IMG/VR virus record: IMGVR_UViG_3300033146_002768
Location: 143,112-207,111 of that record
Strand: one strand, 5' to 3'
DNA length: 64,000 nucleotides
Positions 14,655 to 38,611 of the stretch are shown here, piece by piece. The position numbers were made by a program, and so were the translations under genes. The notes under the pieces are model-generated. The model searched no databases. It was not told where the DNA came from and was given only the letters and a program-made list of their open reading frames with translations. Numbering within the stretch: position 1 is the first letter of the stretch; every line of letters begins with the position of its first letter.

Positions 14655-14664
14655 AATATCTTCC

Positions 14665-15384: not shown

Positions 15385-15387
15385 TAT

Positions 15388-20208: not shown

Positions 20209-20777
20209 AATAACACCTCAATATCTATTCTTTCTCCACCTTGAAATTCAGTAATTCCAAAATTAGTTTCTAATATACCTTTATAAAATCTATCAGAAAC
20301 ATTATATGGAAAAGTAAATATACTTGGAGATATTTGTAAATGTTTTTCAAATTCTTTAAACATTTTCTCTGAATCATTATTTATATATTCGCATTTGTAT
20401 CTTAAATTATTTATTAATCTAAGGTCTGTATGACTGTGACTATGTCCACTTATAATAGTATTGTCTAAAGAATTAATAAATTTTATCTGACTCCAATTCA
20501 TATAATTTTCATAGTTTCCTGATTTAGCTTTTAACATAGCATCTTGACAAGTTATAAAGTCCCAACTTTGTGGTTCGCCTGTTGAGTTAACTACCCCTGT
20601 AGGTATATTAAAAATAAGTGTAGTATCTAAATCATATAAATCAGGAAGAAATAAATATTGAGTCATTAATGCATCATCAAAACTAAGAATATAATCCTCT
20701 AAAGACAAACATAAATATTCTTCTTTAAATTCATGTATCATTAATACTGGTTTATCTATATTCTTTTTTGTATACAT
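20205..20777 (-). CDS. Polysaccharide deacetylase (NodB/CE4-like)
   Basis: LSFDD, MNWSQI, GHSHSH, FTFPY motifs. Confidence 0.8.
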   Translation of the reverse strand: MYTKKNIDKPVLMIHEFKEEYLCLSLEDYILSFDDALMTQYLFLPDLYDLDTTLIFNIPTGVVNSTGEPQSWDFITCQDAMLKAKSGNYENYMNWSQIKFINSLDNTIISGHSHSHTDLRLINNLRYKCEYINNDSEKMFKEFEKHLQISPSIFTFPYNVSDRFYKGILETNFGITEFQGGERIDIEVLL

Positions 20778-21324
20778 ACCATAACCCCGATTTATTTCCT
20801 TGATCTAAAAAAATTTTATTATAATTAATAAATAAACTATTTAATGTTTTAATTATATCTTTTGGATTTTTTAATCCAATCGGTCCACATATTATAGACT
20901 CTTTAGATTTTAATTTTGGTTTACTTAATATCAATAATTTAGATAATCTTTTAAAATCATAAAATGAATCAACCATAATTAAATCTATACTCTTATCACT
21001 AAAATTATTTATTGAGTTTAATACATCATCTTTTATTGTTTTTACATATTTATTAATTTTATATTTTTTGATATTTTTTTTCAAAGTATTTTTCATATTA
21101 TATTCATCTATATCTATACAATAAACTTCTAATTTCTTATAAATAATATATGGAGATATACTACAAATTGATCTACCTTTATAATTGCCACATTCTACTA
21201 ATGTTGAATTATCTGGGATCAAATCTAATAGCGCCCAATATCCTAATACTGATGTATAATCAAACCACCCTTCTGGCAATCCTTCATATAATATTTTTGG
21301 ATATATATTGCGAGCTTGAATCAT
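20752..21324 (-). CDS. Class I SAM-dependent methyltransferase (Methyltransf_24-like)
   Basis: VECGNYKGRS motif I, YCID, DLIMVDS. Confidence 0.7.
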   Translation of the reverse strand: MIQARNIYPKILYEGLPEGWFDYTSVLGYWALLDLIPDNSTLVECGNYKGRSICSISPYIIYKKLEVYCIDIDEYNMKNTLKKNIKKYKINKYVKTIKDDVLNSINNFSDKSIDLIMVDSFYDFKRLSKLLILSKPKLKSKESIICGPIGLKNPKDIIKTLNSLFINYNKIFLDQGNKSGLWYVYKKEYR

Positions 21325-22145
21325 ATAAATTGCCTCACTATTTCATCGTCTTTATTTAAGTATCTATTTTTTAATCCGTTCATATTTAAATCAATATTTC
21401 TATAATAACTTCCATCCTTCCATATCGGTATATTATTATAGATTATATTTTTTTCATAAAAATAAGATTCATGCATTAATCTTGGTCTTGGATCCCACCA
21501 TTTAGCTGCATGGTAATACCAAAAAATATCAAACAATTCAAATAAATTATTTTTATGTTTATGAGTTTTAAATATACATTGTTTTTTAGAAATTCCCCAT
21601 TCTTTTAAAAAACTATAATCATCGCTTTCAGGAGAATGTATAAAAAATTTATCGTCAGATTTTCTTAATGGTTTATATCTATCAAATAAAAATTTCATAT
21701 TATATTGAAAATCTTTATAAACGAATGGCATTTCCCCATAATAATTTACACAACCTTCTGGATATAAATTTTTATTAATTAAATACTTTTTATCCTCAGT
21801 ATGTAAATCTGATAAAATAAAAATTTTTGATTTATTATCTTTGATATTAATAAGACCTTGAACTGCATTTATAGTTCCATAATCTAAAATTAACAATTTA
21901 TTGAATTTAAATTTTAATAGATCTTTTTTCTTTATAGAAATAATGTTAATCTCCCAATCTAAATCATCTAAGTAATATCTTTCTTTAATAATACTAATGA
22001 GTTCTTTTTGAAAAATTGAATTATAATTAATAATTAATAATTTAAAATCTTTATTAAATTCTAAAATACTTAAATAATATTCAACAAGATCTATTACGGC
22101 ACCATGTATATTATTTATATAATTATTAAATAAAATAGCATTCAT
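21321..22145 (-). CDS. Glycosyltransferase-like hypothetical protein
   Basis: N-terminal HGAVIDL, similar to the 18398/19318 pair; C-terminal DPRPRLMHE resembles a GT-B nucleotide-sugar motif. Confidence 0.4.
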   Translation of the reverse strand: MNAILFNNYINNIHGAVIDLVEYYLSILEFNKDFKLLIINYNSIFQKELISIIKERYYLDDLDWEINIISIKKKDLLKFKFNKLLILDYGTINAVQGLINIKDNKSKIFILSDLHTEDKKYLINKNLYPEGCVNYYGEMPFVYKDFQYNMKFLFDRYKPLRKSDDKFFIHSPESDDYSFLKEWGISKKQCIFKTHKHKNNLFELFDIFWYYHAAKWWDPRPRLMHESYFYEKNIIYNNIPIWKDGSYYRNIDLNMNGLKNRYLNKDDEIVRQFI

Positions 22146-22163: not shown

Positions 22164-23063
22164 TCATAATACTTCTCCCTCAATCCAATCTGAGAAATAT
22201 TTATATTTAGTTCTATCTAAAATATGTTCAAAATTATTATCAAATACTTTTAAAAAGAATTTTTTAAAAACCTTACTACTAAAAATTGTATTTATATTAT
22301 CTAATTTATAATCTAATATTAATTTATTGTGATGTCTTGTAACTTCACATATATCATCAATACCATCTTTATGATTTCTGCCAAAAACTTCAGGACAAAT
22401 AATTTGACAATCGGACTGGATAGCTTCTATTAAAGTATGAGGAAATGGGTCTTGGAATTGTTTTGATTTAGGATAAATATAATGAGTTACTTTTTTAAAA
22501 AACTCAATATTATTAAAGGTATGAGTATATTGTTTAATATGCTTATTAGAAATGTTTAAAGAACCGATATTATTTCCCATAGTATAAATATTAACATCTT
22601 GTTTTATATCTTTTAAAATATCAGTTATACATTTAAAACTATCTGGCGTTAACCAGTTTCTTATATAGAATCCAACACAAGGAATGTTAGATGAATTTTT
22701 TTTATTTATTTTAAAATCTGTTATGAAAGGAATGTAATGTTTTATTTTTCTTGCTGACGTATAGTAAAAACCATTATTACATGTATCATATAAAATAGAA
22801 TGATCTCTAGAATACATTAAATAATTTAAGTTTCTTAAACTAATTATATTCAATGGAAATGAATAATTAGAAGCATCTTGTGTATTAAATATAATTCTTT
22901 GATATTGCTCATTCAATTCTCTTAAATGAGCAATATCTCGAATTTGTTTACAATGAATAGTATCTATATAATCACTATGTTCTTCAGCTAATCTTTGAGA
23001 TGCAGTAAATGCTCCTCTTTTTAAATTGTCGTACTTCACGGATATAACTAAATATTTTTTCAT
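22164..23063 (-). CDS. GT4-like glycosyltransferase
   Basis: HYIYPKS..FQDPFPHTLIEAIQSDC resembles the GT4 E/D-x7-E motif. Confidence 0.55.
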   Translation of the reverse strand: MKKYLVISVKYDNLKRGAFTASQRLAEEHSDYIDTIHCKQIRDIAHLRELNEQYQRIIFNTQDASNYSFPLNIISLRNLNYLMYSRDHSILYDTCNNGFYYTSARKIKHYIPFITDFKINKKNSSNIPCVGFYIRNWLTPDSFKCITDILKDIKQDVNIYTMGNNIGSLNISNKHIKQYTHTFNNIEFFKKVTHYIYPKSKQFQDPFPHTLIEAIQSDCQIICPEVFGRNHKDGIDDICEVTRHHNKLILDYKLDNINTIFSSKVFKKFFLKVFDNNFEHILDRTKYKYFSDWIEGEVL

Positions 23064-23087: not shown

Positions 23088-23681
23088 TTAATTAAATGCT
23101 GAATAGAATGTAGCTAACCTTGCTTCAATATCTTCAACAGTTGTTAGTAATATAACTTCATCTGAGAAAATTTTGTAAATATCATAAGTTGATTTTCTCT
23201 CATCTAATTTATCTCTAAGATCTAAATAAATATCTAAAGCATCAATTATTGCTTGATCCCCTGCATTTATTATTTCAAGATATTTAGCTTCTCTATTTTC
23301 ATCAGTAATTACATAACCAAGATCAATCAATCTATTATTTATAATAGTAAATCCATAAAAATCAAACATTGAAAGACTACCAACTCTGTTTGATGTAAAT
23401 TGTCTAGCTTGATTTCTTGCACCAAGAGCTGCTGCAACAATTGCATCTTCTGCTGCCTGAATTATTAGATCACCTTCGACTAATGGATTGATTAAATTTT
23501 TAGCAAAGAATACTGATTGATTAGCTTCTAAAGAAGTTTCAATTGCGTTATAGCATTCAATTGATGAAATTTCATATAGTCTAACTCCGCCAAATTCAAA
23601 GATAGTTTCTTCATCCCCTTGAAATACAGATACTATTTGGTAATTAACACCAACATCATTAATACCAGCTATAAGTTTCAT
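23088..23681 (-). CDS. Hypothetical protein heading the glycan-enzyme block
   Basis: 197 aa ORF with GGAGG RBS and late-promoter-like motif at 23778. Confidence 0.6.
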   Translation of the reverse strand: MKLIAGINDVGVNYQIVSVFQGDEETIFEFGGVRLYEISSIECYNAIETSLEANQSVFFAKNLINPLVEGDLIIQAAEDAIVAAALGARNQARQFTSNRVGSLSMFDFYGFTIINNRLIDLGYVITDENREAKYLEIINAGDQAIIDALDIYLDLRDKLDERKSTYDIYKIFSDEVILLTTVEDIEARLATFYSAFN

Positions 23682-23808: not shown

Positions 23809-24921
23809 TTATTTTCTATCAAAAACTCCATTTATTTTTCCCCAAATAGGAGACAAACCTTCATGATATGATTCTTTTGGATTTGACATTCTCCATTTAT
23901 AAAGAGGACCGCTTACACAATGAGTCTCTGTTGAATTATTTAAATATTTTGTATTAACAACCATACTTCCATATTTAATCGCTTCTTCAACAATTGTAGT
24001 TCTCCACATAGGTAATATGGCTGTTACTATATTACCTGTATCAGGATTATCTGTTTTATCAAATCTTAAAATTGATAAACACTGTTGATGAAATCTAGCA
24101 TTATCTAAATAATAACTTTTATCTAAATCTCTTGATTTACAAATAAATTTTATTAATTGAGATAACATTGGAAAATATGTTCCATGCAACTGATCTGAAA
24201 TTCCTCTATACCTAATTTCTTGAGGTTTATATTCTCTACATACTTTATCAAGTTTTAACATTGGCTCTGTAGTATCACAACTTAATAATACTCCATAAGA
24301 ATATTCTTGATTAGGTTTTAAAGTTATAATATTTTCAGTTATATCTCTAATGTATTTAGGATCAGTTTCACTATCTACACTTAACGCCCAATTAACTTGA
24401 TTACTATCTGGAAATTTATTTATATAAGTATGATCTAATAATTTAATACCATTAGTATAAATATGTATTTTATTATTTGTATTTTCACAAATCCAATGAA
24501 CTAATTTATCAAGATCTTTAAACATAGTTGGTTCTCCACCAACCATTCTAATCACTGGATGATATCCATCATAATGATATTCTTTATATGGTCTTGAACC
24601 ATAACCTCTTAGATCATTAGGAACAAATTCTTTTATATTACTTATAAAATCTTCAAGGGTATTGTTACCAGGATGTTTAACAATCAAATCTTTTTCATAA
24701 CAATATTTACAATTTTTATTACAATCATTTGTCATATGAAAAAATGATGTGAAGTAACCTCCTGCTGTTTCTTCGGGATGAAATTGTTTTTCCCAAATAC
24801 TAAAATCTTCTTCTAATAATACTTTATCATCTTCTGATACTAACCATACTCCATTCATATCATAAACAATTTTCTTTTCTATTATATCTCTAAATTTATT
24901 TAAACCATGTATATTAGTCAT
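23809..24921 (-). CDS. Radical SAM protein
   Basis: CNKNCKYC, VGGEPT, YTNG. Confidence 0.88.
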   Translation of the reverse strand: MTNIHGLNKFRDIIEKKIVYDMNGVWLVSEDDKVLLEEDFSIWEKQFHPEETAGGYFTSFFHMTNDCNKNCKYCYEKDLIVKHPGNNTLEDFISNIKEFVPNDLRGYGSRPYKEYHYDGYHPVIRMVGGEPTMFKDLDKLVHWICENTNNKIHIYTNGIKLLDHTYINKFPDSNQVNWALSVDSETDPKYIRDITENIITLKPNQEYSYGVLLSCDTTEPMLKLDKVCREYKPQEIRYRGISDQLHGTYFPMLSQLIKFICKSRDLDKSYYLDNARFHQQCLSILRFDKTDNPDTGNIVTAILPMWRTTIVEEAIKYGSMVVNTKYLNNSTETHCVSGPLYKWRMSNPKESYHEGLSPIWGKINGVFDRK

Positions 24922-25951
24922 TACTAATTTCTCCTGTATGAAAATTCTGATTATAATAATATGTTATTGGACATATATCATAAATACTATTTTTAATATT
25001 ATCTATTAAATATCGTTGAATTAAAAACAACTTAGACTGGTATATATCGTCTATGCTGGTGTATAATTCTGGATCTATATTAAGGTCATCATTAAATTTA
25101 TATGGCGCAAAAAACGGACATTGGACTATTGTATTGTTATAAGTATAGATAGCCTTTAATGGAAATCTATGACAACCATTAACATGATAAGATACATCAA
25201 CATTATCTAATTTTATAATATCTTGAAATTCAGAGTATGTTTTTTGTATTGTATTAAAATTATTACAAGGGTTTTCTAATTCTTCATAATCCTTTAATAA
25301 TTGCAAGACATAAGTTAAATTTAATGGTTTATACTTTTCCATTATATATAATAATTCATCTCTATTTTTTATTACAGTATTAGCTATAACTTTAATTCCT
25401 ATGTCTTGTAATCGTTTTATATTTTTATAATGCTCTTCAAAGAAACCTTTATCAAAATGATAGTAATCTATTGAAGTATAAAAAGTAAATTCCTTACCAA
25501 CAGCATCACATATATCTTTACATAAAATAAAAAACATTAAATTATTTCCAATGTTTTTTAAGTTAGAATTAATTCTAAAACTTAATTTCATTTTATGTCT
25601 TGTATAAATATTTAAACAACGATCTAAAAATTTTAATAAATCATTTGCTGGCAATAAGGTTAACTCACCACAATTGAAATGAAGTTTTAAAGAATCATGA
25701 CCGTCATTTTTAAATTCAATTAAATACTTTTCTAAAAAAATATAAAATTTTTCATAATCAAATTCTTCATCTTGATTTAAATATTCTTTGAAGCAACAAT
25801 GTTCGCAATTCATATTACATTTACTAGTTAAATTCACCCCAAGGTTAGGAGTGAATTTAACTATATTATTTTCTTGTAATATAATTTTATTACACCAACT
25901 TTGAAAATCATTGCTATTCTCTATATGTCTAAACAATTCTTTTATATGCAT
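24914..25951 (-). CDS. Radical SAM protein
   Basis: CNMNCEHCC, NCGELT, INSN, C-terminal CHRF...CPF. Confidence 0.85.
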   Translation of the reverse strand: MHIKELFRHIENSNDFQSWCNKIILQENNIVKFTPNLGVNLTSKCNMNCEHCCFKEYLNQDEEFDYEKFYIFLEKYLIEFKNDGHDSLKLHFNCGELTLLPANDLLKFLDRCLNIYTRHKMKLSFRINSNLKNIGNNLMFFILCKDICDAVGKEFTFYTSIDYYHFDKGFFEEHYKNIKRLQDIGIKVIANTVIKNRDELLYIMEKYKPLNLTYVLQLLKDYEELENPCNNFNTIQKTYSEFQDIIKLDNVDVSYHVNGCHRFPLKAIYTYNNTIVQCPFFAPYKFNDDLNIDPELYTSIDDIYQSKLFLIQRYLIDNIKNSIYDICPITYYYNQNFHTGEISND

Positions 25952-25958
25952 ATGTTTC

Positions 25959-26519
25959 CTATAGATATTCTATATCATATTTTAATCTAATATCACTTTT
26001 AGCTGAATAGTTACAGTTACATGTGCAAGCATAATTACAATTACATGTACAAGCATAATTACATTGACATGTACATGCATAATTACATTGACATGTACAT
26101 GCATAATTACAATTACATGTACAAGAATAATTACAATCACAAACACATATTGCTTCTATAACATTAACTCTATCTCTCATTGCATTATATTGTTGAGCTT
26201 CAATTTCATCATCTGTACCAGTATCAGTATCAGCTAAATATGACGGCCATGTCCATGCAGTAGCAGCATTGATGCCATCACGAAGTCTTCTAACATGTAA
26301 ACTACTAGCATTAGTTGCAGTAGTAACAGCACCTGGATCTGCTGGCCAGCTAGCACTTCTTCTTGTTAATTCTGCAGCAATAGCTGTTCTTAATTCATTA
26401 TGATAAATAGCTTTAATTGAGTTAGTTGTTAATGGATCGTCGCTCCAAGTAGTAGGAGTTATACCTGGTATATACCCTCCATGTGCTGGGCAACTATTTG
26501 TGTGTCCTCCGCAAGCCAT
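25959..26519 (-). CDS. Cys-rich repeat fibre-like protein A (candidate radical SAM substrate)
   Basis: Six C-x-C-x-C-N-Y units, three internal W..D...H/Y..(L/M)R..(I/V) repeats, and terminal SDIRLKYDI. Confidence 0.85.
   Translation of the reverse strand: MACGGHTNSCPAHGGYIPGITPTTWSDDPLTTNSIKAIYHNELRTAIAAELTRRSASWPADPGAVTTATNASSLHVRRLRDGINAATAWTWPSYLADTDTGTDDEIEAQQYNAMRDRVNVIEAICVCDCNYSCTCNCNYACTCQCNYACTCQCNYACTCNCNYACTCNCNYSAKSDIRLKYDIEYL
26007..26147 (-). repeat. 24-bp-period coding tandem repeat encoding (x)CTCxCNY
   Basis: Plus-strand units such as gcataattacaattacatgtacaa repeated without spacers. Confidence 0.95.
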
Positions 26520-26531
26520 AGTATTATCTCC

Positions 26532-27107
26532 TTATTTAGTGCCTGAATAGTTACAATCACATGTACATGAATAATTACAATTACATGTGCAATAGTTACA
26601 ATTACAAGTACAATAGTTACAATTACAAGTACAAGCATAATTACAATCACAAGTACAATTATAATTACATTGACATGTACAAGCATAATTACAATCACAA
26701 ACACATTCAGTTTCCATTGTATTGACTTGCGATCTAATAGCATTATATTGATCTACTTGAATTAGATCTCCAACTTCTGTATCTGGATCGTCTAAATAAG
26801 ATGGCCATGTCCATGCTTTAGCAGCATTTACTCCATTTCTTAATTGTCTTACATGATTACTTTCAATTATATTTGTAGTAGCTACTGTTCCTGGGTCAGT
26901 TGGCCAACTTTGACTACGTCTAATTAATTCATCATCAATAGCATTTCTAAGTTCGTTATGATGTGTTGTTATAAACTTAGTAGATGTGGTTAACGGTTGT
27001 GTAGTCCACACAGTAGGAGATTCTGGGTATATTCCCTGAACATTAGATAGACAAGTGTTACTATGGTCTTCGCATGAAGATGGTGTTGTATGTCCTGTAC
27101 ATGCCAT
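26532..27107 (-). CDS. Cys-rich repeat fibre-like protein B (paralog of A)
   Basis: Seven C-x-C-x-C-N-Y units; shares HNELR.AI..EL.RRS.SWP.DPG and AWTWPSYL.D with A. Confidence 0.85.
   Translation of the reverse strand: MACTGHTTPSSCEDHSNTCLSNVQGIYPESPTVWTTQPLTTSTKFITTHHNELRNAIDDELIRRSQSWPTDPGTVATTNIIESNHVRQLRNGVNAAKAWTWPSYLDDPDTEVGDLIQVDQYNAIRSQVNTMETECVCDCNYACTCQCNYNCTCDCNYACTCNCNYCTCNCNYCTCNCNYSCTCDCNYSGTK
26547..26705 (-). repeat. 21/24-bp-period coding tandem repeat encoding CTCxCNY
   Basis: Seven units, directly readable. Confidence 0.95.
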
Positions 27108-27110
27108 AAT

Positions 27111-28259
27111 TTATCCTCCGTTTTGTTGCAATAATTTTCTTATCGCAAAAACTATTTTTCCATTTATTTTATAAAAATTGCATAATCTTGGTTGTGTAGT
27201 ATAATCTCTCCATTTCTCAAAATAGTCTTTCTTTTCACTTCGGTCAAATTTAACCGGATTACATCTTAAACAAAATGTCGCTAAGCAATTTTTACATTCC
27301 TCAGGTTCCCAACCAAAATTATTATTATGTAACTTATTAGTTATATCTAAATTTGTTATAAAGGATTCATTTTTAATATCAATAATTAAATGTTCACCTT
27401 TTTTATCATCGTACATACTTCCATGACATTTGAAAATATTACCATCCCAATTAACACAAACCATATCTCGACCTGCGCAACATAAAGCTTTATTAGGATT
27501 AAACCAACTAAAGAAGAATTTATTATTTGTTTTGAAAAATTCTATTTCTTCCTTAGCAATTTTAATTAAAGACTCATTCAGTTCTTTATTGAATACTTCT
27601 ATTTCTTTATTATTATATTTTTCTAAGTTATAATAATCTATTGTTGGAAAATAATTATCACTTCTAAAGAAATTATTTTCAGGCATTTCTTTATAAAGAT
27701 TTAATACATCTTCTCTTGCTTCAGGAAGATATTTAAATGCTTCAGGTGATATAGTAGATTTTATAACTGATGGTATTTTTCTTTTCCATAAGTCTTTAAT
27801 AACATTTCTTATTTTAGTACCAGTTAATTTATTCTTTTTAGTTTTTCTAAAGATATCATGAACTGGCATACCATCATATGATACTTGAACACAAAACTTT
27901 GGATGACCAAACAAAGATTTATTTTTAGATTCTTCAAATATATCCATATAACGATCTAATAAATATCCATTGCTATAAATAAAAAACTTTACTCTATCAT
28001 CTGTTTTAAAAGCAGTGTATATTTTTCTAATTGCTTTTTCATTAAGAGTAGGTTCCCCACCCCAAAATCCAATATTAAGTAAATCATAATTCTTTTTAAA
28101 GAAATCAGAATTTAAAAGTTGATTCATTTTTATAATAAACAATTCATGATCTTTAAATTCTTTATGTTCAAAAAATTCATGTTCAAAACAATAGGTACAA
28201 TTGAAATTACAATTTGCTGTAACCGTTAAGTCGATATTATATATTCTTATATTTTGCAT
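27111..28259 (-). CDS. Radical SAM/SPASM peptide-maturase-like protein
   Basis: CNFNCTYC, GGEPTL, SPASM-like CCAG...V...DGNIFKCHG...CKNC.ATFCLRC. Confidence 0.9.
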   Translation of the reverse strand: MQNIRIYNIDLTVTANCNFNCTYCFEHEFFEHKEFKDHELFIIKMNQLLNSDFFKKNYDLLNIGFWGGEPTLNEKAIRKIYTAFKTDDRVKFFIYSNGYLLDRYMDIFEESKNKSLFGHPKFCVQVSYDGMPVHDIFRKTKKNKLTGTKIRNVIKDLWKRKIPSVIKSTISPEAFKYLPEAREDVLNLYKEMPENNFFRSDNYFPTIDYYNLEKYNNKEIEVFNKELNESLIKIAKEEIEFFKTNNKFFFSWFNPNKALCCAGRDMVCVNWDGNIFKCHGSMYDDKKGEHLIIDIKNESFITNLDITNKLHNNNFGWEPEECKNCLATFCLRCNPVKFDRSEKKDYFEKWRDYTTQPRLCNFYKINGKIVFAIRKLLQQNGG

Positions 28260-28269
28260 TATTCACCTT

Positions 28270-29265
28270 TTAGAATTGTCTAAATTCATGCTTTGTTTCT
28301 TTTTCATCATATGTAATTCCTGTTGTAGGAGATAAATATGAATTACCTATAAAATTATCTTTTTCACATATTCTGCATATATCACATACATGTCCACAAA
28401 TAGGAATTTTATATCTTTCAAAAATAGATTTTAAATATGGAAGATTTTTTTCTTTAATTGTTTTGCCTACATGTGATTGTTTTAAAGTATCATCAAGTTC
28501 TTGATAAGCATATCCAATAGTAATCCTACTTAAATAATCACTATTAAATTTTTCTAATATATAAATAGTATCGTCAATTACTTTATCATAATTACCAGAA
28601 TGAACTGTATAACTAATTTTAAAAGGAATTTTATATTTAGATAATGTTTTAATAGATTCTTCAACTATATCTTTACTATTAGTTCCATCTGGAAATTTTC
28701 TTTTGAATTGTCCAGAACCATCATAACTTATTTCCAAATTAAAACTTATATTATAGTGTTTACCATATTCTATTAAACTTTTTAAAGCATTTAATTTGAT
28801 AGAATTAAATAAGGTAGCATTAGTTATTAAACTTAATCCAAATCCTTTTGCTTTACCTTGAGAAACTAATTCTATTGTTTTAGCTATTGTATATTGTATT
28901 AAATCAAATTTTAAAAAGGGTTCTCCGCCCATAATAACAATAGTTGATATACAGTCTTTTTCTCTTACGCAAATTTCATTTAAAAAATCATCAATCATTT
29001 TAGGAGTACAATTAGCTTGATCTTCAAGACCATTCTTACTACTAGATTCATAGCAATATGTACATCTTAAATTACAATCAGTATTTAAATAAATAACATT
29101 AGTTCTTTGACTATTATTCATTTTAATTTTATTTGTTGGCAGATTGATACAAGTGTCAAATTCACAAGAGTTACATTCACCATTACATTTTTGAGATTCA
29201 TTCTTTGATAATATATCACTCATATCATTAAAGAATGAATCTATATGTTTATCTATTTGATACAT
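28270..29265 (-). CDS. Radical SAM protein with Cys-rich N-terminal extension
   Basis: CNLRCTYC, MGGEPFL, ITNA; N-terminal CNGECNSCEFDTC; C-terminal C...CD.C..C. Confidence 0.88.
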   Translation of the reverse strand: MYQIDKHIDSFFNDMSDILSKNESQKCNGECNSCEFDTCINLPTNKIKMNNSQRTNVIYLNTDCNLRCTYCYESSSKNGLEDQANCTPKMIDDFLNEICVREKDCISTIVIMGGEPFLKFDLIQYTIAKTIELVSQGKAKGFGLSLITNATLFNSIKLNALKSLIEYGKHYNISFNLEISYDGSGQFKRKFPDGTNSKDIVEESIKTLSKYKIPFKISYTVHSGNYDKVIDDTIYILEKFNSDYLSRITIGYAYQELDDTLKQSHVGKTIKEKNLPYLKSIFERYKIPICGHVCDICRICEKDNFIGNSYLSPTTGITYDEKETKHEFRQF

Positions 29266-29693
29266 TAGTTTCCAATACTTTGTCTAATTTTATCTACTAA
29301 AGATGTAATTTCATCATCAATGTTTTCTTGTACTATTGGCGGTGTAGTTCCATCTGGAATATTTGAATGTCCATGACAATTAAATGCCGGGTCTTCATTG
29401 TTTTCTATATTAGTAACTGGACGTTTAAATAATTCTGAGGCTTCTTGAACAGGGTGATTAGAAACTGGGTGTTTAAATAGTTCTGAGGATTCTTGAATAG
29501 GTTGACTAAAAATTTCTGGTTCATTACATTTACAATTGTCATCTTCTAATAATTTCAATACTTTATCACTTAATTGCAAAGCTTCAAAACTAACTTCATC
29601 ATTAATTTCTTTCATTGCATGTGTGATTTTTAAAAGACCTTTAGCACAATTAAAAATAATTTCATTTTGTTCTGGTGTATTATTACAACTCAT
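29265..29693 (-). CDS. Hypothetical protein with short internal duplication
   Basis: PIQESSELFKHPVSN / PVQEASELFKRPVTN. Confidence 0.6.
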   Translation of the reverse strand: MSCNNTPEQNEIIFNCAKGLLKITHAMKEINDEVSFEALQLSDKVLKLLEDDNCKCNEPEIFSQPIQESSELFKHPVSNHPVQEASELFKRPVTNIENNEDPAFNCHGHSNIPDGTTPPIVQENIDDEITSLVDKIRQSIGN

Positions 29694-29708
29694 TTTCGTT
29701 TCTCCTTC

Positions 29709-30824
29709 TTAACCTACATTTTTTATTGAATTAATTAATGTTTCTTTAAACATTTTATTTTCTTTTAGTTCTTTGGTAATTCTCATTGTATTTTTATAAG
29801 TAATTTTTAATATCTTACATAAATTATCAATCGGTTCTGCATACTCTTCTGGTGATGATGAATTTTTTAATTGACTATTCATACACCCACCATTACAGTA
29901 TTTATATAATTCACATTCTAAACATTTTTTAAATGTCTTAGGATTTATTAGATTTGGATTTCTAAGTAATTGAATTTCTTTAGTAAATTCTTGATTAAAT
30001 GAATTTCCTATTTTCTTTTCTTTACAGCTACCAAATCTTGCACATGGATATATATCTCCATTAGGCATAAACCCAGCTCCACCAGTTCCAGCAAAACAAC
30101 CAAAAGGTCTTTTACCAAAACTCTTACCAAATAAAAGGTCTAAAGTATATAGTTGAAAGAATCCAACATTAGCATTAATGCCTTCGTTATAATATTTGAT
30201 TACTTGGTTAGCTAATAAATGACATTCAATTTCATAATTAGCAACATCATAATCTGTCCATATATCATCTCGAACTAATGTAAAATCAGGGTTGTTGACA
30301 TTTAATTCTTCAACAAACCATTTAAAATTATCAACCATTGTAGGAACACAATCAGGTGATACCATTACTTTACACCCACCACCACGTCCAAAGAAATATG
30401 ATTTTAATGGTTCAGTTAAATATAAATCTAAACTAGAACCACCATGTTTCAATTTACGATTTTTTTCATTCCACAATCCATCAAATGATAAAGACAATGC
30501 AATCTGATTATCATCAATGTATTGTCTTTTATAATCATCTTGTAATACTAAACCATTTGTCATTGCTATAATAAATTTACAATGAGAATCATTTTTTAAA
30601 ATTGGAATTATATATTCAATAAGCTCCCAATTTAATAATGGTTCACCACCAAACAATGCAGCAGTATATTCATGTTGTCCATAAAAGTCCATTATCTTTG
30701 GGAGCATCTTAAAATGTTTATCAAATATTTCGTTTGTCATATTATTCGGTTGTTGATTAATATAACAATATTCACAAGCTAAATTACAATCTTCAGTCGT
30801 TACTATCTGAAATTCAAATCCCAT
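29709..30824 (-). CDS. Radical SAM/SPASM (anSME-like) maturase
   Basis: CNLACEYC, FGGEPLLN, SFDG, full SPASM-like CFAG...G.IYPC...CLECELYKYCNGGC...C. Confidence 0.92.
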   Translation of the reverse strand: MGFEFQIVTTEDCNLACEYCYINQQPNNMTNEIFDKHFKMLPKIMDFYGQHEYTAALFGGEPLLNWELIEYIIPILKNDSHCKFIIAMTNGLVLQDDYKRQYIDDNQIALSLSFDGLWNEKNRKLKHGGSSLDLYLTEPLKSYFFGRGGGCKVMVSPDCVPTMVDNFKWFVEELNVNNPDFTLVRDDIWTDYDVANYEIECHLLANQVIKYYNEGINANVGFFQLYTLDLLFGKSFGKRPFGCFAGTGGAGFMPNGDIYPCARFGSCKEKKIGNSFNQEFTKEIQLLRNPNLINPKTFKKCLECELYKYCNGGCMNSQLKNSSSPEEYAEPIDNLCKILKITYKNTMRITKELKENKMFKETLINSIKNVG

Positions 30825-30834
30825 TATATTTCCT

Positions 30835-31359
30835 TTATTTCACGAATCCTAATACTAATTTTTCATCTGGATTATCATTAGTTTCTAATGCAATAGCCAC
30901 TTTAAATATATGTTCTAATACATTAGTTGCTGATCTTAAACAACCATTACCTGCAGAAATAAGAATATCTTTTTTATAAACTGGTCCGATTGTTCTAACT
31001 GGAACTCTACCAACTAAACCAACAACTGCTCCATCTTCCATTTTTGTATTCATTTCGAAACCAGGTGCTTTAGAAATAATACCAACTACAAATTCAGATG
31101 CATCTTTATCACAAATCTCTGCATCAAATTCACTATCAGATATTTCCATTACTGTCCCAATAGGAAGAGAAATATCTGGATTAACAGAATATCTCTCAGC
31201 AAGGTCACCGTAATATGCTCCAGTTGTATCACCTTGAAATGTAGCACAAAAAATATTATTAAATCTATCAGTTAGACCGCTACCTATATTGTATGCTCCA
31301 TTGCCAACATCAGTAGTAGTTTCATCTTTACCAATTTTTTGTCTTATTTTATAATTCAT
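30835..31359 (-). CDS. Stand-alone tail-spike chaperone-like domain (Peptidase G2/IMC-like)
   Basis: GDLAERY...GTV.....VGIIS..P...VGLVGRVPV...G.V.K.D.L. Confidence 0.6.
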   Translation of the reverse strand: MNYKIRQKIGKDETTTDVGNGAYNIGSGLTDRFNNIFCATFQGDTTGAYYGDLAERYSVNPDISLPIGTVMEISDSEFDAEICDKDASEFVVGIISKAPGFEMNTKMEDGAVVGLVGRVPVRTIGPVYKKDILISAGNGCLRSATNVLEHIFKVAIALETNDNPDEKLVLGFVK

Positions 31360-32195: not shown

Positions 32196-32267
32196 TTTAT
32201 TTTACTTTCTAAGTGAACTTTAATCTTATGAGTTTCTAAAGTGGCAAAAACCACTAAAATCGACAAA

Positions 32268-32286
32268 TATTTATAATATGTTCTAT
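32268..32286 (-). promoter_or_regulatory. Putative late promoter
   Basis: TAGAACATATTATAAATA upstream of tail gene 32195. Confidence 0.6.
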
Positions 32287-32326
32287 TTCAATTTACATGC
32301 TAGATTTATATTTTAATAGTATGATT

Positions 32327-32342
32327 CTATATATATTAATAA
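32327..32342 (+). promoter_or_regulatory. CTATATATATTAATAA motif (putative early/host-RNAP promoter), copy 1
   Basis: Same 16-mer at 49658..49673 and a one-mismatch copy at 49418..49433. Confidence 0.5.
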
Positions 32343-32359
32343 ACATAATATAACACAAA

Positions 32360-32453
32360 GCAATTGTACCGACGGAATATTTGGGATAATGCAAGGTGTT
32401 TGACATCTTACATTATCCCAAAAGTAACATCATCCGTATTTAGTAAATTGTGC
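32360..32453. ncRNA. Candidate structured non-coding RNA (long hairpin)
   Basis: TTGGGATAATG (32381-91) pairs with CATTATCCCAA (32411-21); inner AAGGTGT/ACATCTT; outer ACGGA/TCCGT; no ORF. Confidence 0.4.
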
Positions 32454-32501
32454 AAAATAACTGATTAGTAATTTATAATATGTTCTATATGTTTGGTTAA
32501 C

Positions 32502-33125
32502 TTAGTCACTTATTATATCAGTGTCCTCAAATACATCTTGAACAGTAGGATAGTGTTTATCTACTGTTACAATTATCCAGCCATCATCTTTTAATTTTTG
32601 ATTTTTATGTGGATCAGGAAATGGATCTTCATTATGCCAAAAAGAATTAGGAAAGTCAAATGCTACTTTCTTAATAGGGTCAGCCATATCAGTAATATAT
32701 TTCCATAATAATGCATCATCATGAAAATGTCTTTTCTCTATACTATAATTATTTTCTAAGTAAGGATAAGCATCATGAAGGAATGTTAGAATATCAGCTT
32801 TATTTTTTGATACTCCTTCTAAGTTTATATGTGAAAACTTATCATTCAATAAAGGATTATCAATATCTATTTCTTCATCTAATGGTTCAGATGGTATTCC
32901 TTCTGTATCTTGAAATAGAATACTATCTTTGAATTTATATCTTGTCGCTTGATATTGTGTGCTAGATATAGGACAATCTGGATACTTTAATTTATACTCA
33001 GCGAAGGTCATTCCATCATGTTTCTTTTTTAAATGTTTAGGTGTTATAAGTCTGAATGCTTCGCCACACTCTTGGCATATAACTTTACCATTTATACCTT
33101 TAGGATATTGCAACTCAATAGTCAT
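32502..33125 (-). CDS. Zn-finger plus degenerate DUF559/Vsr-like endonuclease
   Basis: CQEC...HLKKKH finger; YITDMADPIKKVAFDFPNSFWH where active enzymes have D....IE.DG..WH. Confidence 0.6.
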   Translation of the reverse strand: MTIELQYPKGINGKVICQECGEAFRLITPKHLKKKHDGMTFAEYKLKYPDCPISSTQYQATRYKFKDSILFQDTEGIPSEPLDEEIDIDNPLLNDKFSHINLEGVSKNKADILTFLHDAYPYLENNYSIEKRHFHDDALLWKYITDMADPIKKVAFDFPNSFWHNEDPFPDPHKNQKLKDDGWIIVTVDKHYPTVQDVFEDTDIISD

Positions 33126-33244
33126 TAATTTTCCCCTTAATCAAATCATTACATTTATTTAATTATATGTTCTATATTTGGAACATTATTACATATAAAA
33201 GAACAAATCTAAAATATAAACATATAATATATAAGGAGTTTAAA

Positions 33245-36775: not shown

Positions 36776-38611
36776 ATGGCTACACAAAGAACAGCGGAAG
36801 CAATTCAGTTAGAGAATGAAGTTAAAACTCATGATCAAGCATACTGGGTTAAAAACAAACCTCTTGTTAATGATGATATTTATGATCAGATTGTCAGGAG
36901 ACTTTTAAAAATCGAACCGGATAATGTATACCTTAATAAACCAAAAGCTCCAAAGGTTGATTCCCAAGGTAAGGTAACTCATTCAATCCCTATGTTAAGT
37001 CTTGATAAAGAATATGACTTTGATGGTATTCTAAAATTCTGTAAAAGAGTATGTAGAAGTTTGGATGAAAAACTTAAAGTAATGTTTAAGTTTGATGGAG
37101 TATCTGGTCAACTTATGTTTGATATTCTTGCCTCAAGAGGTGACGGTGATATCGGAGAAGACATTACACATAAACTTCCTTTTATGAATATTCTTACAAA
37201 AGGAGATCCAAACTTTGTACGAGGAGAAATTCTTTTCACCAAATCAAAGTTTAAAGAGATCAAAGGTGTCGTTACCAGAAAGAATGGTGAAGATTATAAG
37301 AATGAAAGAAACGCCGTTGGTGGTGTATTGAGTCGGGATGATATGGAACCTGTTCAAGTCCTTACCTTTGTTGACTTTGAATATATTTGCAAAGAGTTTA
37401 CTCATGCTGAAATTATTGAACTTGGTGCTTATGGATGGCAAGGTATTGTTGAAGAAGCAAAGGAATCAAATTTTCCAACTGATGGACTTGTTATAAAAGT
37501 TGCTGATGAAGAATATGCAAAAACTCTCGGTGAAACAAGACATCATTCAAAATCTGCTACTGCATTTAAATTTGCTAATCCTGGTGCCTGGTCTGTATTA
37601 AGAAGTGTTTTATTCAGTCCTGGTAAACATGATATAACTCCAGTTGGTAAGATTGATCCTGTTGAAATAACAGGTGTATCAGTTGCTAGTCCATCTCTCC
37701 ATAACTGGAAAAATATTCTTGACCGTGATTTACAAATTGGAGATGAGATTTGGGTTGAAAGAGCAGGTGATGTTATACCTTATATTTCAGCATCTAAACC
37801 AGGTAAAGAAAGAACTCCAATTGAGATACCTCCATGTCCTGTATGTGGTGGAGATGTTGCATATGTAGACCCTCAGTTGGTTTGTGTTAATGATGATTGC
37901 CCGGGTAAACTCTTAAATAAATTATCTGATGCAGTTATTAGAATTGGGATTGACCGTCTTGGTAAACCCACTATTCAAAAGATGATTGATACACATAACA
38001 TTGAAAACTTGGTTGATATATTCTCATTATCAATGGATGATCTTTTAAAGATGGAAAGATTTGGAAAAACATCTGCTGCTAATCTTTATAATGAAATTGA
38101 TAAGGTTAGACAAGGTGGAGCATATGAATGGCAGTTCCTTGCATGTTTAAATATTCAAGGAATCGGAAGAAGTTTAAGTAAAGATCTTTTGGTTGATAGA
38201 TCAATTTCTGATCTTGCTAAAATGACTGACGATATGTTAACTAAACTTCCAAATATTGGGGATGAGCGAGCTCATGTTTTAATTGAAGGAATTAGAAATA
38301 ACTGGGAGTATCTCAAAATATTAAATCAGATAATTCCTTTAAAAGTTGCTGAGGTTAAAGAAGATATTAATGAAGATGCTATAAAGATTTGTTTCACTGG
38401 TCGATTCCCTGAAAATAAAAAAGTTTATTATGATCTCTTAGAAGAGAAAGGTGGATATGATATTATGAATAAAGTTACAACTCTTACTGAAGTTTTAGTT
38501 GTTGCTGATCCATCTAAGGAATCAAATAAAACAAAATCAGCAAAGAAGAAAGGGATTAAAATTATTGGGATTGATGAATTGTTTGGAGGTGTAGATATTG
38601 GATCAGCTTAG
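36776..38611 (+). CDS. ligA: NAD-dependent DNA ligase
   Basis: H..PMLSL, KFDG adenylation motif, SRGDG..GEDIT, DGLVIK, A.K, ERAGDVIP, C..C zinc finger, HhH, BRCT. Confidence 0.96.
   Translation: MATQRTAEAIQLENEVKTHDQAYWVKNKPLVNDDIYDQIVRRLLKIEPDNVYLNKPKAPKVDSQGKVTHSIPMLSLDKEYDFDGILKFCKRVCRSLDEKLKVMFKFDGVSGQLMFDILASRGDGDIGEDITHKLPFMNILTKGDPNFVRGEILFTKSKFKEIKGVVTRKNGEDYKNERNAVGGVLSRDDMEPVQVLTFVDFEYICKEFTHAEIIELGAYGWQGIVEEAKESNFPTDGLVIKVADEEYAKTLGETRHHSKSATAFKFANPGAWSVLRSVLFSPGKHDITPVGKIDPVEITGVSVASPSLHNWKNILDRDLQIGDEIWVERAGDVIPYISASKPGKERTPIEIPPCPVCGGDVAYVDPQLVCVNDDCPGKLLNKLSDAVIRIGIDRLGKPTIQKMIDTHNIENLVDIFSLSMDDLLKMERFGKTSAANLYNEIDKVRQGGAYEWQFLACLNIQGIGRSLSKDLLVDRSISDLAKMTDDMLTKLPNIGDERAHVLIEGIRNNWEYLKILNQIIPLKVAEVKEDINEDAIKICFTGRFPENKKVYYDLLEEKGGYDIMNKVTTLTEVLVVADPSKESNKTKSAKKKGIKIIGIDELFGGVDIGSA

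What the first reader, a model, noticed from the sequence alone, without database searches (positions are those of the whole stretch)
27111..30824. SPASM-bearing trio directly upstream of the Cys-repeat genes as likely core maturases
Seen: 29709 has a full anSME-like SPASM Cys array and 27111 has a SPASM-like array. 28270 carries an extra N-terminal CNGECNSCEFDTC cluster, and a small accessory ORF (29265) with a 15-aa duplication lies between them. All are transcribed just before substrates B and A. Established: SPASM domains bind auxiliary Fe-S clusters and typify peptide-modifying rSAMs. Inference: these act on the repeats, and the small ORF could be a substrate-recognition or scaffold partner.
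Basis: partly seen in the sequence, partly recalled or inferred. Interest (0 to 1): 0.72.

Follow-up and report, generated by a model that had tools for sequence, protein, structure and literature searches.

The report
Radical-SAM enzymes paired with Cys-ladder phage fibres
Three radical-SAM enzymes in a large phage sit in a gene module, conserved across hundreds of phage lineages, next to tail-fibre-like proteins ending in a dense cysteine repeat, so they most likely cross-link a virion fibre chemically, which has not been described before.

Summary
The window comes from a 207-kb phage record. The three radical-SAM (rSAM) genes are real and lie in one tightly packed minus-strand block just upstream of two Cys-repeat genes.

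- 29709 has a full 7-Cys SPASM array.
- 27111 has a conserved 7-Cys variant of it.
- 28270 has no SPASM, only a conserved C-terminal Cx3Cx2Cx2C. Its N-terminal Cys cluster is lineage-specific.

Evidence that enzymes and Cys proteins work together:
- 53 non-redundant phage loci hold a 27111 ortholog. 45-48 also hold the Cys-tail protein, usually abutting it (median gap 1 nt), 43 hold a 29709 ortholog and 40 hold the downstream p23088 protein.
- Among 50,697 GenBank phages, the same 15 Campylobacter Firehammervirus records hold both.
- CP220 keeps all three enzymes even though they are scattered.

The "substrates" are not small RiPP precursors. In relatives the Cys block ends exactly where a Peptidase_S74 intramolecular-chaperone domain of tail fibres begins. 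The next gene resembles a tail-fibre assembly chaperone. The IBB_35 homolog was detected in virions.

All three enzymes score best against the thioether-forming PapB family, but below its cut-off.

Best reading: protein-level thioether stapling of a fibre. The chemistry is inferred, not shown.

The parts
30835..31359 (-). Tail-fibre C-terminal-like protein (174 aa) at the head of the module
   Evidence: Matches phrog_19602 'tail fiber protein' at E 3e-7 and phrog_22593 at 3e-8. Homologous domains lie at the end of 225-903-aa proteins just upstream of the module in L004, L009, L010, L015, L019 and L021. The L004 copy gives a weak Peptidase_G2 IMC hit below the cut-off.
29709..30824 (-). R29: rSAM enzyme with a full 7-Cys SPASM domain
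   Evidence: Pfam Radical_SAM and TIGR04085 hits are over their cut-offs. Best NCBIfam family is PapB (1e-40, 139.9 bits, cut-off 340). Best solved structure is 5wgg at 6e-19, aligned from residue 104 of that chain. The SPASM Cys are kept in 12/12 orthologs. An ortholog is present in 43/53 non-redundant loci.
29265..29693 (-). Small ORF (142 aa): helical N-terminus, variable Cys/His-containing linker with a 48-nt x2.2 duplication (29409-29512), C-terminal helix
   Evidence: A small ORF always follows R29 in relatives, but it falls into two unrelated families. No Pfam family reaches its cut-off, and no RRE/PqqD family appears even at E <= 10.
28270..29265 (-). R28: rSAM enzyme without SPASM; conserved C-terminal Cx3Cx2Cx2C; lineage-specific N-terminal 4-Cys cluster
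   Evidence: An ortholog is present in 23/53 loci. It is enriched where the substrate has CxC[ND][YF] repeats: 19/25 against 4/20, Fisher p 3e-4, not corrected for phylogeny.
27111..28259 (-). R27: rSAM enzyme with a conserved SPASM-like 7-Cys array; the most constant partner of the Cys-tail protein
   Evidence: PapB is the best family for all 12 orthologs tested. Its stop abuts the Cys-tail gene start in 59 pairs, median gap 1 nt. At least 373 relatives lie in IMG/VR.
26532..27107 (-). Cys-ladder protein A (191 aa); array of 7 units CTCxCNY(x) at about 26544-26705
   Evidence: Matches phrog_26958 (the family containing the repeat protein represented by CP220 gp140) at 1.3e-19.
25959..26519 (-). 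Cys-ladder protein B (186 aa); array of 6 octads at about 26004-26147; ends with SDIRLKYDIEYL, the first 12 residues of an S74 chaperone domain
   Evidence: AF2 gives residues about 10-125 pLDDT above 90 and the array below 50. 329 homologs were found, none carrying any name beyond 'hypothetical protein'.
24914..25951 (-). Accessory rSAM (345 aa), lineage-specific insertion between substrate and p23088
   Evidence: CX3CX2C is present. There are only weak NCBIfam hits, YydG at 7.5e-5. No counterpart was found in the first 20 related loci.
23809..24921 (-). Accessory rSAM (370 aa), lineage-specific
   Evidence: Pfam Radical_SAM scores 40.1 bits; the best NCBIfam hit is viperin-like at 4.7e-13, partial.
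23088..23681 (-). p23088: conserved partner directly after the Cys-tail gene; tail-fibre assembly-chaperone-like
   Evidence: Present in 40/53 loci. AF2 pLDDT is 92. The nearest folds and features are Phage_tail_APC, Caudo_TAP and DUF4376, all with TM below 0.6, so these are leads only. The family has 409 clusters at 50% identity with E <= 1e-10.

Best explanation
The trio belongs to a conserved phage module that makes and chemically matures a fibre-like virion protein.

The module:
- The Cys-ladder proteins A and B have a folded helical N-terminal domain and a C-terminal array of CTCxCNY(x) units.
- In relatives this array sits directly in front of a Peptidase_S74 intramolecular chaperone. 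In known tail fibres and spikes that domain folds a trimeric beta-helix and then cuts itself off.

Proposed mechanism:
- While the chain is still unfolded in the cytoplasm, R27 and R29 (SPASM enzymes), and R28 where present, each use a [4Fe-4S] cluster and SAM to make a 5'-deoxyadenosyl radical.
- The radical abstracts a hydrogen from a conserved neighbour residue (Thr, Asn/Asp or Tyr of the unit).
- The carbon radical is then joined to a cysteine sulfur held by an auxiliary cluster. This gives non-reducible thioether staples along the array.
- The p23088 protein, which resembles a tail-fibre assembly chaperone, then helps assembly.

Status of each step:
- Shown: gene anatomy, conserved Cys motifs, module synteny and co-occurrence, the S74 junction in relatives, and virion detection of the Campylobacter phage homolog.
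- Inferred: that the array is the target, that the product is a thioether, that the fibre is trimeric, and co-transcription.
For: 1. Linkage. Of 53 non-redundant loci with an R27 ortholog, 45 hold a Cys-tail protein at >= 40 bits (48 at any score), 43 hold R29, 23 hold R28 and 40 hold p23. Three of the apparent misses (L080, L081, L084) hold divergent Cys-tail proteins, and two others (L034, L053) appear to be cut by contig ends.
2. The search anchored on p23 returned the same module in nearly every locus with enough context. L135 has it too, but with in-frame stops.
3. Two different gene orders keep the same members. The R27 stop and the Cys-tail start abut, with a median gap of 1 nt over 59 pairs.
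4. Unlinked co-occurrence. The same 15 Firehammervirus records out of 50,697 phages hold both the repeat and R27. CP220 has orthologs of R29 (8e-77), R28 (3e-32) and R27 scattered over its 177 kb.
5. Enzyme class. PapB is the best family for all three enzymes and for 12/12 R27 orthologs. Other Cys-peptide or protein thioether maturases (SCIFF, CXXX-repeat, CcpM, QhpD) follow. The best solved relative of R29 is 5wgg, aligned through the whole SPASM region.
6. The only element shared by all substrate relatives is the C-terminal Cys block. The N-terminal MACxGH motif is missing in the second gene-order type.
7. Cys, and also Thr, Asn and Tyr of the unit, are invariant or nearly so in 60 homologs.
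8. Fibre nature. PF13884 starts at the Ser right after ...CNY in L040, L047, L021 and L045. Split-off S74 ORFs occur in L039 (PF13884) and, by weaker HMM hits or by eye, in L035, L072 and L104.
9. IBB_35 gene 3-9 (the CNYCTCD protein) is listed among virion proteins found by MS/MS (PMC3322345 supplement).
10. Fe-S carrier genes lie inside the module in L021 (PF01521) and, by eye, in L053.
Against: - No chemistry is shown. None of the three reaches the cut-off of any named maturase family, so the reaction type is extrapolated.
- PapB-type acceptors are Asp/Glu at C-x3-D (PMC12373016). That spacing is not the unit here.
- The enzymes lack the N-terminal region that precedes the rSAM core in 5wgg (alignments start at residue 100-104). 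How a substrate would be recognised is unknown.
- The complex prediction gave no answer.
- The AF2 monomer gives no confident fold for the array, and trimer formation was not tested.
- The window's own proteins lack a full S74 domain, and none lies in the held 207 kb.
- Virion evidence is one MS/MS entry with 2.6% coverage, in a distant 534-aa homolog.
- A CxC ladder could instead bind metals.
Confidence: 0.6

Rival explanations
1. The Cys block is a metal- or iron-sulfur-binding ladder in the core of a trimeric fibre. It would be comparable to the His-x-His iron sites of the T4 long tail fibre tip, or to CxC motifs of metallothioneins. Under this reading the rSAM enzymes make a different modification of the same protein. 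Candidates are Cys to formylglycine, epimerisation, Tyr-centred C-C cross-links or methylation.
For: - The hexad form CxCxxx in relatives has the spacing of plant type-1 metallothionein N-domains (my knowledge).
- Fe-S carrier genes lie in some modules.
- Anaerobic sulfatase maturase and cyclophane-forming families are among the lower-scoring hits.
- Asn and Tyr ladders are also typical of beta-solenoids, so their conservation need not mark acceptor sites.
Against: - PapB, SCIFF and QhpD-type thioether enzymes outscore the anaerobic sulfatase maturase and cyclophane families for R29 by more than 20 orders of magnitude in E-value.
- Strict conservation of the non-Cys residues of the unit is unlike metallothioneins.
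- Metal binding alone does not explain two or three dedicated SPASM enzymes abutting the gene.
Confidence: 0.2
2. This is a classical RiPP. The Cys array is a core peptide that is cross-linked, cut from its N-terminal 'leader' domain, and released as a bioactive peptide such as an antimicrobial or host-manipulating agent. This is.
For: - RiPP-type maturases sit next to repeat-rich Cys genes.
- Tandem paralogs of the substrate occur: 2 in the window and 3-4 in L052 and L079, as in multi-precursor RiPP clusters.
- Self-cleaving ends (S74, and possibly a Hint-like end in L063) could serve release.
Against: - No leader peptidase and no exporter is among the recurring module members, and no RRE was detected in the small ORFs or at the enzymes' N-termini.
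- The 'leader' is a 115-aa folded domain.
- The S74 chaperone, the chaperone-like downstream gene and the tail-fibre neighbours point to virion assembly.
- The IBB_35 homolog was found in virions.
- The module is almost confined to phages: 4 hits in 185,579 species genomes.
Confidence: 0.1
3. The rSAM genes have nothing to do with the Cys proteins. They would serve nucleotide, DNA or glycan modification, or host metabolism, as proposed for Campylobacter phages in 2010 and 2012. Under this reading the neighbourhood is a hitch-hiking effect.
For: - The window carries about 12 rSAM genes together with carbamoyltransferases and a methyltransferase.
- The literature suggested metabolic or DNA-protective roles (PMC2853527, PMC3322345).
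Against: - Synteny is kept through two gene orders and down to 28-34% identity.
- Co-occurrence holds even when the genes are unlinked in CP220.
- The family affinities are to peptide maturases.
- R29 scores and R28 presence track the substrate repeat type.
Confidence: 0.05

Closest known systems
PapB / freyrasin (ranthipeptide maturase, NF047865)
   Same: PapB is the best-scoring named family for all three enzymes. It is an rSAM enzyme (R29 and R27 add SPASM-type auxiliary Cys arrays) that acts on a repeated Cys motif to give thioethers (PMC12373016).
   Different: - Scores are far below the family cut-off: 140, 81 and 64 bits against 340.
- PapB links Cys to Asp/Glu in C-x3-D units of a short leader-guided peptide.
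- Here the unit is CTCxCNY(x) with three Cys.
- The partner is a 190-aa to 530-aa fibre-like protein, and there are two or three enzymes per substrate.
CteB / SCIFF system (PDB 5wgg; TIGR03974)
   Same: 5wgg is the best solved relative of R29 (6e-19), with all SPASM Cys aligned. From my knowledge it forms a Cys-Thr thioether, and Thr is a conserved residue of the repeat unit here.
   Different: - The phage enzymes lack the first ~100 residues of that chain.
- The score of 91.6 is below the cut-off of 425.
- No 45-aa SCIFF-type precursor is present.
QhpD / QhpC (quinohemoprotein amine dehydrogenase maturation, TIGR03906)
   Same: From my knowledge, this is an rSAM/SPASM enzyme that installs several Cys thioethers inside a protein subunit rather than a released peptide. 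It hits R29 at 2e-17 and 11 of 12 R27 orthologs. It is the best functional precedent for protein-level stapling.
   Different: - The phage enzymes are not members (62.7 bits against a cut-off of 453).
- There is no dehydrogenase context.
- The substrate here is a tandem repeat in a virion-type protein.
Tail fibres and spikes with a Peptidase_S74 intramolecular chaperone (endosialidase, T5 L-shaped fibre)
   Same: Relatives of proteins A and B carry PF13884 directly after the Cys block, over the cut-off. The domain starts at the conserved Ser-Asp. Protein B keeps SDIRLKYDIEYL.
   Different: - Known S74 fibres have no Cys ladder and no dedicated rSAM enzymes.
- The window's proteins have lost all (A) or all but 12 residues (B) of the domain.
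- In some relatives the domain is a separate ORF.
Campylobacter phage CP220 gp140 (the reported CPT_0180 21-bp-repeat gene, by inference) / IBB_35 gene 3-9, and the 11-12 rSAM genes of Firehammervirus
   Same: - The same repeat (CNYCTCD x6) is preceded by the same helix-then-CxCDCNY junction.
- Orthologs of R27, R29 and R28 are present in the genome.
- The repeat and the rSAM abundance were both reported in PMC2853527.
   Different: - The protein is 534 aa, with the repeat in the middle.
- The enzymes are scattered over the genome.
- The papers drew no link between the repeat protein and the rSAM genes, and proposed metabolic or DNA-related roles.

Membership tests
Radical SAM superfamily (PF04055) | CX3CX2C cluster motif and the core fold | tested here: met
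   All three score over the Pfam cut-off: 38.5, 57.8 and 39.4 bits against 29.5. The motif is conserved in orthologs.
SPASM subgroup (TIGR04085 / PF13186) | C-terminal 7-Cys array Cx9-15Gx4C ... Cx2Cx5Cx3C ... C | tested here: met
   For R29 (29709): TIGR04085 scores 45.6 against a cut-off of 27, and all seven Cys are kept in 12/12 orthologs. Pfam SPASM scores 21.3 against 21.5, just under.
SPASM subgroup (TIGR04085 / PF13186) | The same 7-Cys array in 27111 | tested here: inconclusive
   Seven Cys are conserved in 13/13 orthologs, but the middle spacing is Cx2Cx4Cx2C. No SPASM model appears in the listed hits. The alignment to PapB covers the region.
SPASM subgroup (TIGR04085 / PF13186) | The same 7-Cys array in 28270 | tested here: not met
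   Only a C-terminal Cx3Cx2Cx2C is conserved (9/9). There is no Cx9-15Gx4C. Family alignments end before the C-terminus.
PapB family ranthipeptide maturase (NF047865) | Score over the curated cut-off (340 bits) | tested here: not met
   Scores are 139.9, 81.3 and 63.9 bits. The best R27 ortholog reaches E 1.5e-29.
PapB family ranthipeptide maturase (NF047865) | Substrate with C-x3-D/E units behind a leader | tested here: not met
   The units are CTC[NDQ]CNY(x). Where Asp occurs, it lies one or three residues after a Cys, not four (PMC12373016 for the PapB motif).
Anaerobic sulfatase maturase (TIGR03942) | Score over the cut-off (349 bits) and a cognate sulfatase | tested here: not met
   Scores are 64.3, 42.3 and 42.1 bits. 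No PF00884 match lies in the held 207 kb, which is 66% of the genome.
SCIFF maturase (TIGR03974) | Score over the cut-off (425 bits) and a ~45-aa six-Cys precursor | tested here: not met
   R29 scores 91.6 bits. No such small precursor lies among the ORFs of 40 aa or more in the block.
Classical RiPP cluster | Short precursor with leader and core, an RRE or leader-binding element, and a leader peptidase or exporter | tested here: not met
   The substrates are 186-191 aa with a folded N-domain. No RRE/PqqD signal appears in the enzymes' N-termini or the small ORFs. No peptidase or transporter is among the recurring module members.
Tail fibre/spike with S74 intramolecular chaperone (PF13884) | PF13884 domain at the C-terminus, starting at the conserved Ser | tested here: not met
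   This row is for the window's own proteins. A has none, and B keeps only the first 12 residues. There is no PF13884 match in the held genome.
Tail fibre/spike with S74 intramolecular chaperone (PF13884) | The same domain in orthologous Cys-tail proteins of related loci | tested here: met
   L040 scores 31.5, L047 25.7, L021 28.1, L045 28.6 and the split ORF in L039 36.8 bits, against a cut-off of 22.
Tail fibre/spike with S74 intramolecular chaperone (PF13884) | Trimeric beta-helix preceding the chaperone; presence in the virion | not testable with these tools
   The monomer model gives the array a pLDDT below 50. The only virion evidence is IBB_35 gene 3-9, at 2.6% coverage.

The most novel reading that the evidence does not exclude
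Phages use RiPP-type radical-SAM enzymes to staple a cysteine-ladder beta-helix in a virion fibre covalently. The staples would be thioethers acting as non-reducible substitutes for disulfides, made in the reducing and often anoxic host cytoplasm. This would be the first rSAM post-translational modification of a virus structural protein. It is present in hundreds of lineages of large phages. It would also give a first concrete role to three of the long-unexplained 11-12 rSAM genes of Campylobacter Firehammervirus phages.
Probability: 0.4. Interest if true: 0.9.

Novelty: new variant of a known kind. Interest (0 to 1): 0.8.

Why it matters
- It would extend rSAM/SPASM cross-linking chemistry from small secreted peptides to virion architecture. 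That adds a new type of covalent reinforcement of phage particles, beside HK97-type isopeptide chainmail.
- It turns a puzzle dating from 2010, why Campylobacter phages carry so many rSAM genes, into a testable enzyme-substrate hypothesis in cultured phages: CP220 gp023, gp099 and gp136 acting on gp140.
- It defines an unannotated protein family. The 329 substrate homologs carry no name beyond 'hypothetical protein', and the partner protein has about 400 clusters at 50% identity.
- It offers naturally repetitive, leader-independent Cys-stapling enzymes that could interest peptide engineers.

Tried and rejected
- Complex prediction of R29 + small ORF + protein B scored 0.00, so the verdict was 'no answer'. 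It counts neither for nor against.
- Foldseek of the substrate model against PDB and BFVD found nothing with E <= 0.001. Sequence and profile searches of the PDB with the substrate family found nothing meaningful.
- Foldseek of p23088 against PDB found nothing. AFDB and the Atlas gave only weak tail-chaperone leads, all with TM below 0.6.
- The Atlas search for the small ORF gave nothing usable.
- Pfam at E <= 10 on ten small ORFs showed no PqqD/RRE signal. hhalign between the two small-ORF families gave probability 0.1%.
- The promoter and terminator scan equalled the shuffled expectation, so it says nothing about the operon.
- The search for a split-off S74 ORF or a sulfatase in the held genome found none.
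- No sequencing run was listed for the region, so no expression data were obtained.
- Five literature searches found no paper linking rSAM enzymes to phage fibres or to this repeat. A sixth search, on Firehammervirus receptor-binding proteins, also found none.
- I considered 'one enzyme per Cys position' and rejected it. Loci with the same CNY units manage with two enzymes (L004, L010, L019).
- I considered that L135 was a decayed module without substrate and rejected it. tblastn reads both genes through in-frame stops.

Full report
**What is there.** The window is part of a 207-kb IMG/VR phage record. CheckV puts it at 66% complete, and GC is about 27%. It encodes a major head protein, a portal and tail-fibre-like proteins.

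From 32195 down to 23809 on the minus strand, ten ORFs follow each other with gaps of -8 to 15 nt. In order they are:
- two tail-fibre-like proteins;
- R29 (29709-30824);
- a 142-aa small ORF;
- R28 (28270-29265);
- R27 (27111-28259);
- Cys-ladder proteins A and B;
- two further rSAM genes.

After a 127-nt gap comes p23088 (23088-23681).

**The observation.** All three enzymes have CX3CX2C and pass the Pfam Radical_SAM cut-off.
- R29 has a textbook SPASM array, kept in 12/12 orthologs, and passes TIGR04085.
- R27 has seven conserved Cys in a SPASM-like layout with a Cx2Cx4Cx2C centre, kept in 13/13 orthologs.
- R28 has no SPASM. Only a C-terminal Cx3Cx2Cx2C is conserved (9/9).
- The duplication in the small ORF is a 48-nt unit in 2.2 copies.
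- The Cys genes hold 24-nt arrays of 5.6 and 6.8 copies. These encode six octads in B, and five octads plus two heptads in A, of CTCxCNY(x).

**Are enzymes and Cys proteins coupled?**
- A search with protein A found 20 viral loci. Nearly all show tail-fibre-like gene, R29, small ORF, (R28), R27, Cys protein, p23 homolog in that order.
- The reverse search with an R27 alignment found at least 373 relatives in IMG/VR.
- In 53 non-redundant loci with an R27 ortholog, 45 hold a Cys-tail protein at >= 40 bits (48 at any score). 43 hold R29, 23 hold R28 and 40 hold p23.
- Three of the misses (L080, L081, L084) have divergent proteins that still end in a Cys block, and two others (L034, L053) appear to be cut by contig ends.
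- A third search, anchored on p23, returned the same module again. The one apparent exception, L135, is read through in-frame stops by tblastn.
- A second gene order exists: R27, R29, small ORF, R28, Cys protein, p23. The association therefore survives rearrangement.
- The R27 stop and the Cys-gene start abut, with a median gap of 1 nt.
- Among 50,697 GenBank phages, the same 15 Campylobacter Firehammervirus records hold the repeat and R27.
- In CP220 the orthologs of R29 (gp023), R28 (gp099), R27 (gp136) and the repeat protein gp140 are scattered over the genome, yet all are present.
- In 185,579 species genomes there are only four hits. Two of them, a Peredibacter chromosome and a Bdellovibrionales MAG, carry the whole module.

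This is strong comparative evidence for a functional unit.

**What are the 'substrates'?** The wider family has three parts:
- a variable N-terminus, often with a MACxGH...C...H motif;
- a helical region;
- a C-terminal Cys block. This is either hexads (CxCNxx, four units) or CNY heptads and octads (4 to more than 28 units).

In many members the block runs straight into a Peptidase_S74 intramolecular-chaperone domain. PF13884 is over its cut-off, and the model starts at the Ser right after ...CNY. In some members the rest of that domain is a separate ORF (L039 by PF13884; L035, L072 and L104 by weaker HMM hits or by eye). In one GC-rich phage a Hint-like end seems to replace it (by eye).

From established knowledge of endosialidase and T5 fibres, this chaperone folds a trimeric beta-helix that lies just before it, and then cleaves itself off.

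Protein B keeps only the first 12 residues of the domain, and A keeps none. No S74 ORF lies in the held 207 kb.

Further points on these proteins:
- AF2 gives residues 10-125 of B a confident three-helix domain with no known fold relatives. It gives no confident structure for the array as a monomer.
- p23088 folds confidently. Its nearest neighbours by fold and by language-model features are phage tail assembly chaperones, but all at TM below 0.6.
- The IBB_35 homolog (gene 3-9, 60.3 kDa) is in the MS/MS list of virion proteins, at 2.6% coverage (PMC3322345).

These proteins therefore look like fibre components, not leader-plus-core peptides.

**What do the enzymes do?**
- PapB, a ranthipeptide thioether maturase, is the top NCBIfam family for R29 (1e-40), R27 (7e-23) and R28 (1e-17), and for all 12 R27 orthologs.
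- SCIFF, CXXX-repeat, CcpM, QhpD and nif11 maturases follow. Anaerobic sulfatase maturase is much weaker, and no sulfatase gene is present.
- None reaches a curated cut-off, so these are new families within the peptide/protein-maturase branch.
- The best solved relative of R29 is 5wgg, the SCIFF maturase by my knowledge. It aligns through the SPASM region but only from residue 104. The phage enzymes therefore lack an N-terminal recognition domain.
- PapB joins Cys sulfur to the beta or gamma carbon of Asp/Glu in C-x3-D units (PMC12373016). QhpD does the same inside a protein subunit (my knowledge).
- In the repeat here, Thr, Asn and Tyr are almost as invariant as the cysteines. This fits defined acceptor sites or a defined solenoid fold, and is unlike metallothioneins.
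- R28 is enriched where the block is of the CNY type: 19/25 against 4/20, p 3e-4, uncorrected for phylogeny. R29 scores also track the repeat type.

**Best reading and rivals.** I conclude, at about 0.6, that the trio matures the Cys ladder of a fibre-like virion protein, most likely by thioether cross-links. My separate estimates are:
- about 0.85 for functional coupling;
- about 0.65 for a structural role;
- about 0.5-0.6 for thioether chemistry.

The rivals are:
- a metal-binding ladder with a different rSAM modification (0.2);
- a released RiPP (0.1);
- no relation between enzymes and Cys proteins (0.05).

The role of the small ORF is open. It is conserved in position but comes in two unrelated families. 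It shows no RRE signal, and the complex prediction gave no answer.

**Novelty.** Six full-text searches found no paper that links rSAM enzymes to phage fibres or to this repeat. The 2010 and 2012 Campylobacter phage papers noted both the intragenic 21-bp repeat and the 11-12 rSAM genes, but proposed metabolic or DNA-protective roles. None of the 329 substrate homologs carries any name beyond 'hypothetical protein'. The partner protein family has 409 clusters at 50% identity with E <= 1e-10.

The enzyme-plus-Cys-repeat logic is a known kind. A fibre protein with a self-cleaving chaperone as the target, in a module nearly confined to phages, is a new variant.

Noticed in passing
window 8583-16188 (and G000 as a whole): There are 16 PF04055 matches in the 207-kb record, about 12 of them in the window. 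They include a run of short rSAM paralogs: 8583-9413, 9410-10264, 10243-11265, 12806-13687, 13674-14654, 14665-15384 and 15388-16188. Relatives also carry runs of weak rSAM paralogs 3-8 kb downstream of p23. Their targets are unknown.
   Followed up: partly
window 11265-12809, 16944-18401, 16185-16835, 20752-21324, 18398-20208: Between the rSAM runs lie two carbamoyltransferase genes, a DUF6071 protein, a methyltransferase and a tandem pair of paralogous unknowns. Homologs of 22164-23063 and 21321-22145 follow p23 in many related loci (by eye), so the conserved block may extend beyond the module described.
   Followed up: partly
L021:6194-6523; L053:10326-10577: IscA/HesB-type Fe-S cluster carrier genes sit inside the module between R29 and R28 in some relatives. 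The L021 copy matches PF01521 at 58 bits; the L053 copy was recognised by eye.
   Followed up: partly
L009:1947-3694: In one relative, an acyl-carrier-protein-like ORF, a dehydratase-like ORF and a ketosynthase-like ORF are inserted between R29 and R28. They were recognised by eye only.
   Followed up: no
L063:9826-10488: In a GC-rich phage the Cys block (CGCDANCGCDVNC...) is followed by what looks like a Hint/intein-type self-processing end instead of the S74 domain.
   Followed up: no
L135:5508-7570: The R27 and Cys-tail homologs read in one frame by tblastn, but are interrupted by stops under code 11. This suggests stop-codon reassignment in that phage.
   Followed up: partly
L018:13051-14221 (Campylobacter phage CP21): The R27 ortholog is split into two ORFs (CP21_110 and CP21_111) in CP21, but is intact in CP220 and CPt10.
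   Followed up: no
L052:11810-14374; L079:9501-11558: Three to four tandem paralogs of the Cys-tail protein share an identical CNY block but have divergent N-terminal domains. The pattern resembles a cassette of alternative fibre heads.
   Followed up: no
window 25959-27107, N-termini of A and B: A conserved N-terminal MACxGHxxxCxxHxGY motif (C3 and H6 in at least 90% of 60 homologs) looks like a small Cys/His metal knuckle. A similar NCHGH or CNGHT appears in the linker of the small ORF family.
   Followed up: partly
window about 32200-33170: The strand switches and the GC skew changes sign between the minus-strand structural/modification block and a plus-strand block. The plus-strand block encodes phosphoesterase-like proteins (by eye), an NAD-dependent ligase-like ORF at 36776-38611 (assigned by eye) and a nicotinamide phosphoribosyltransferase at 44209-45381.
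   Followed up: no
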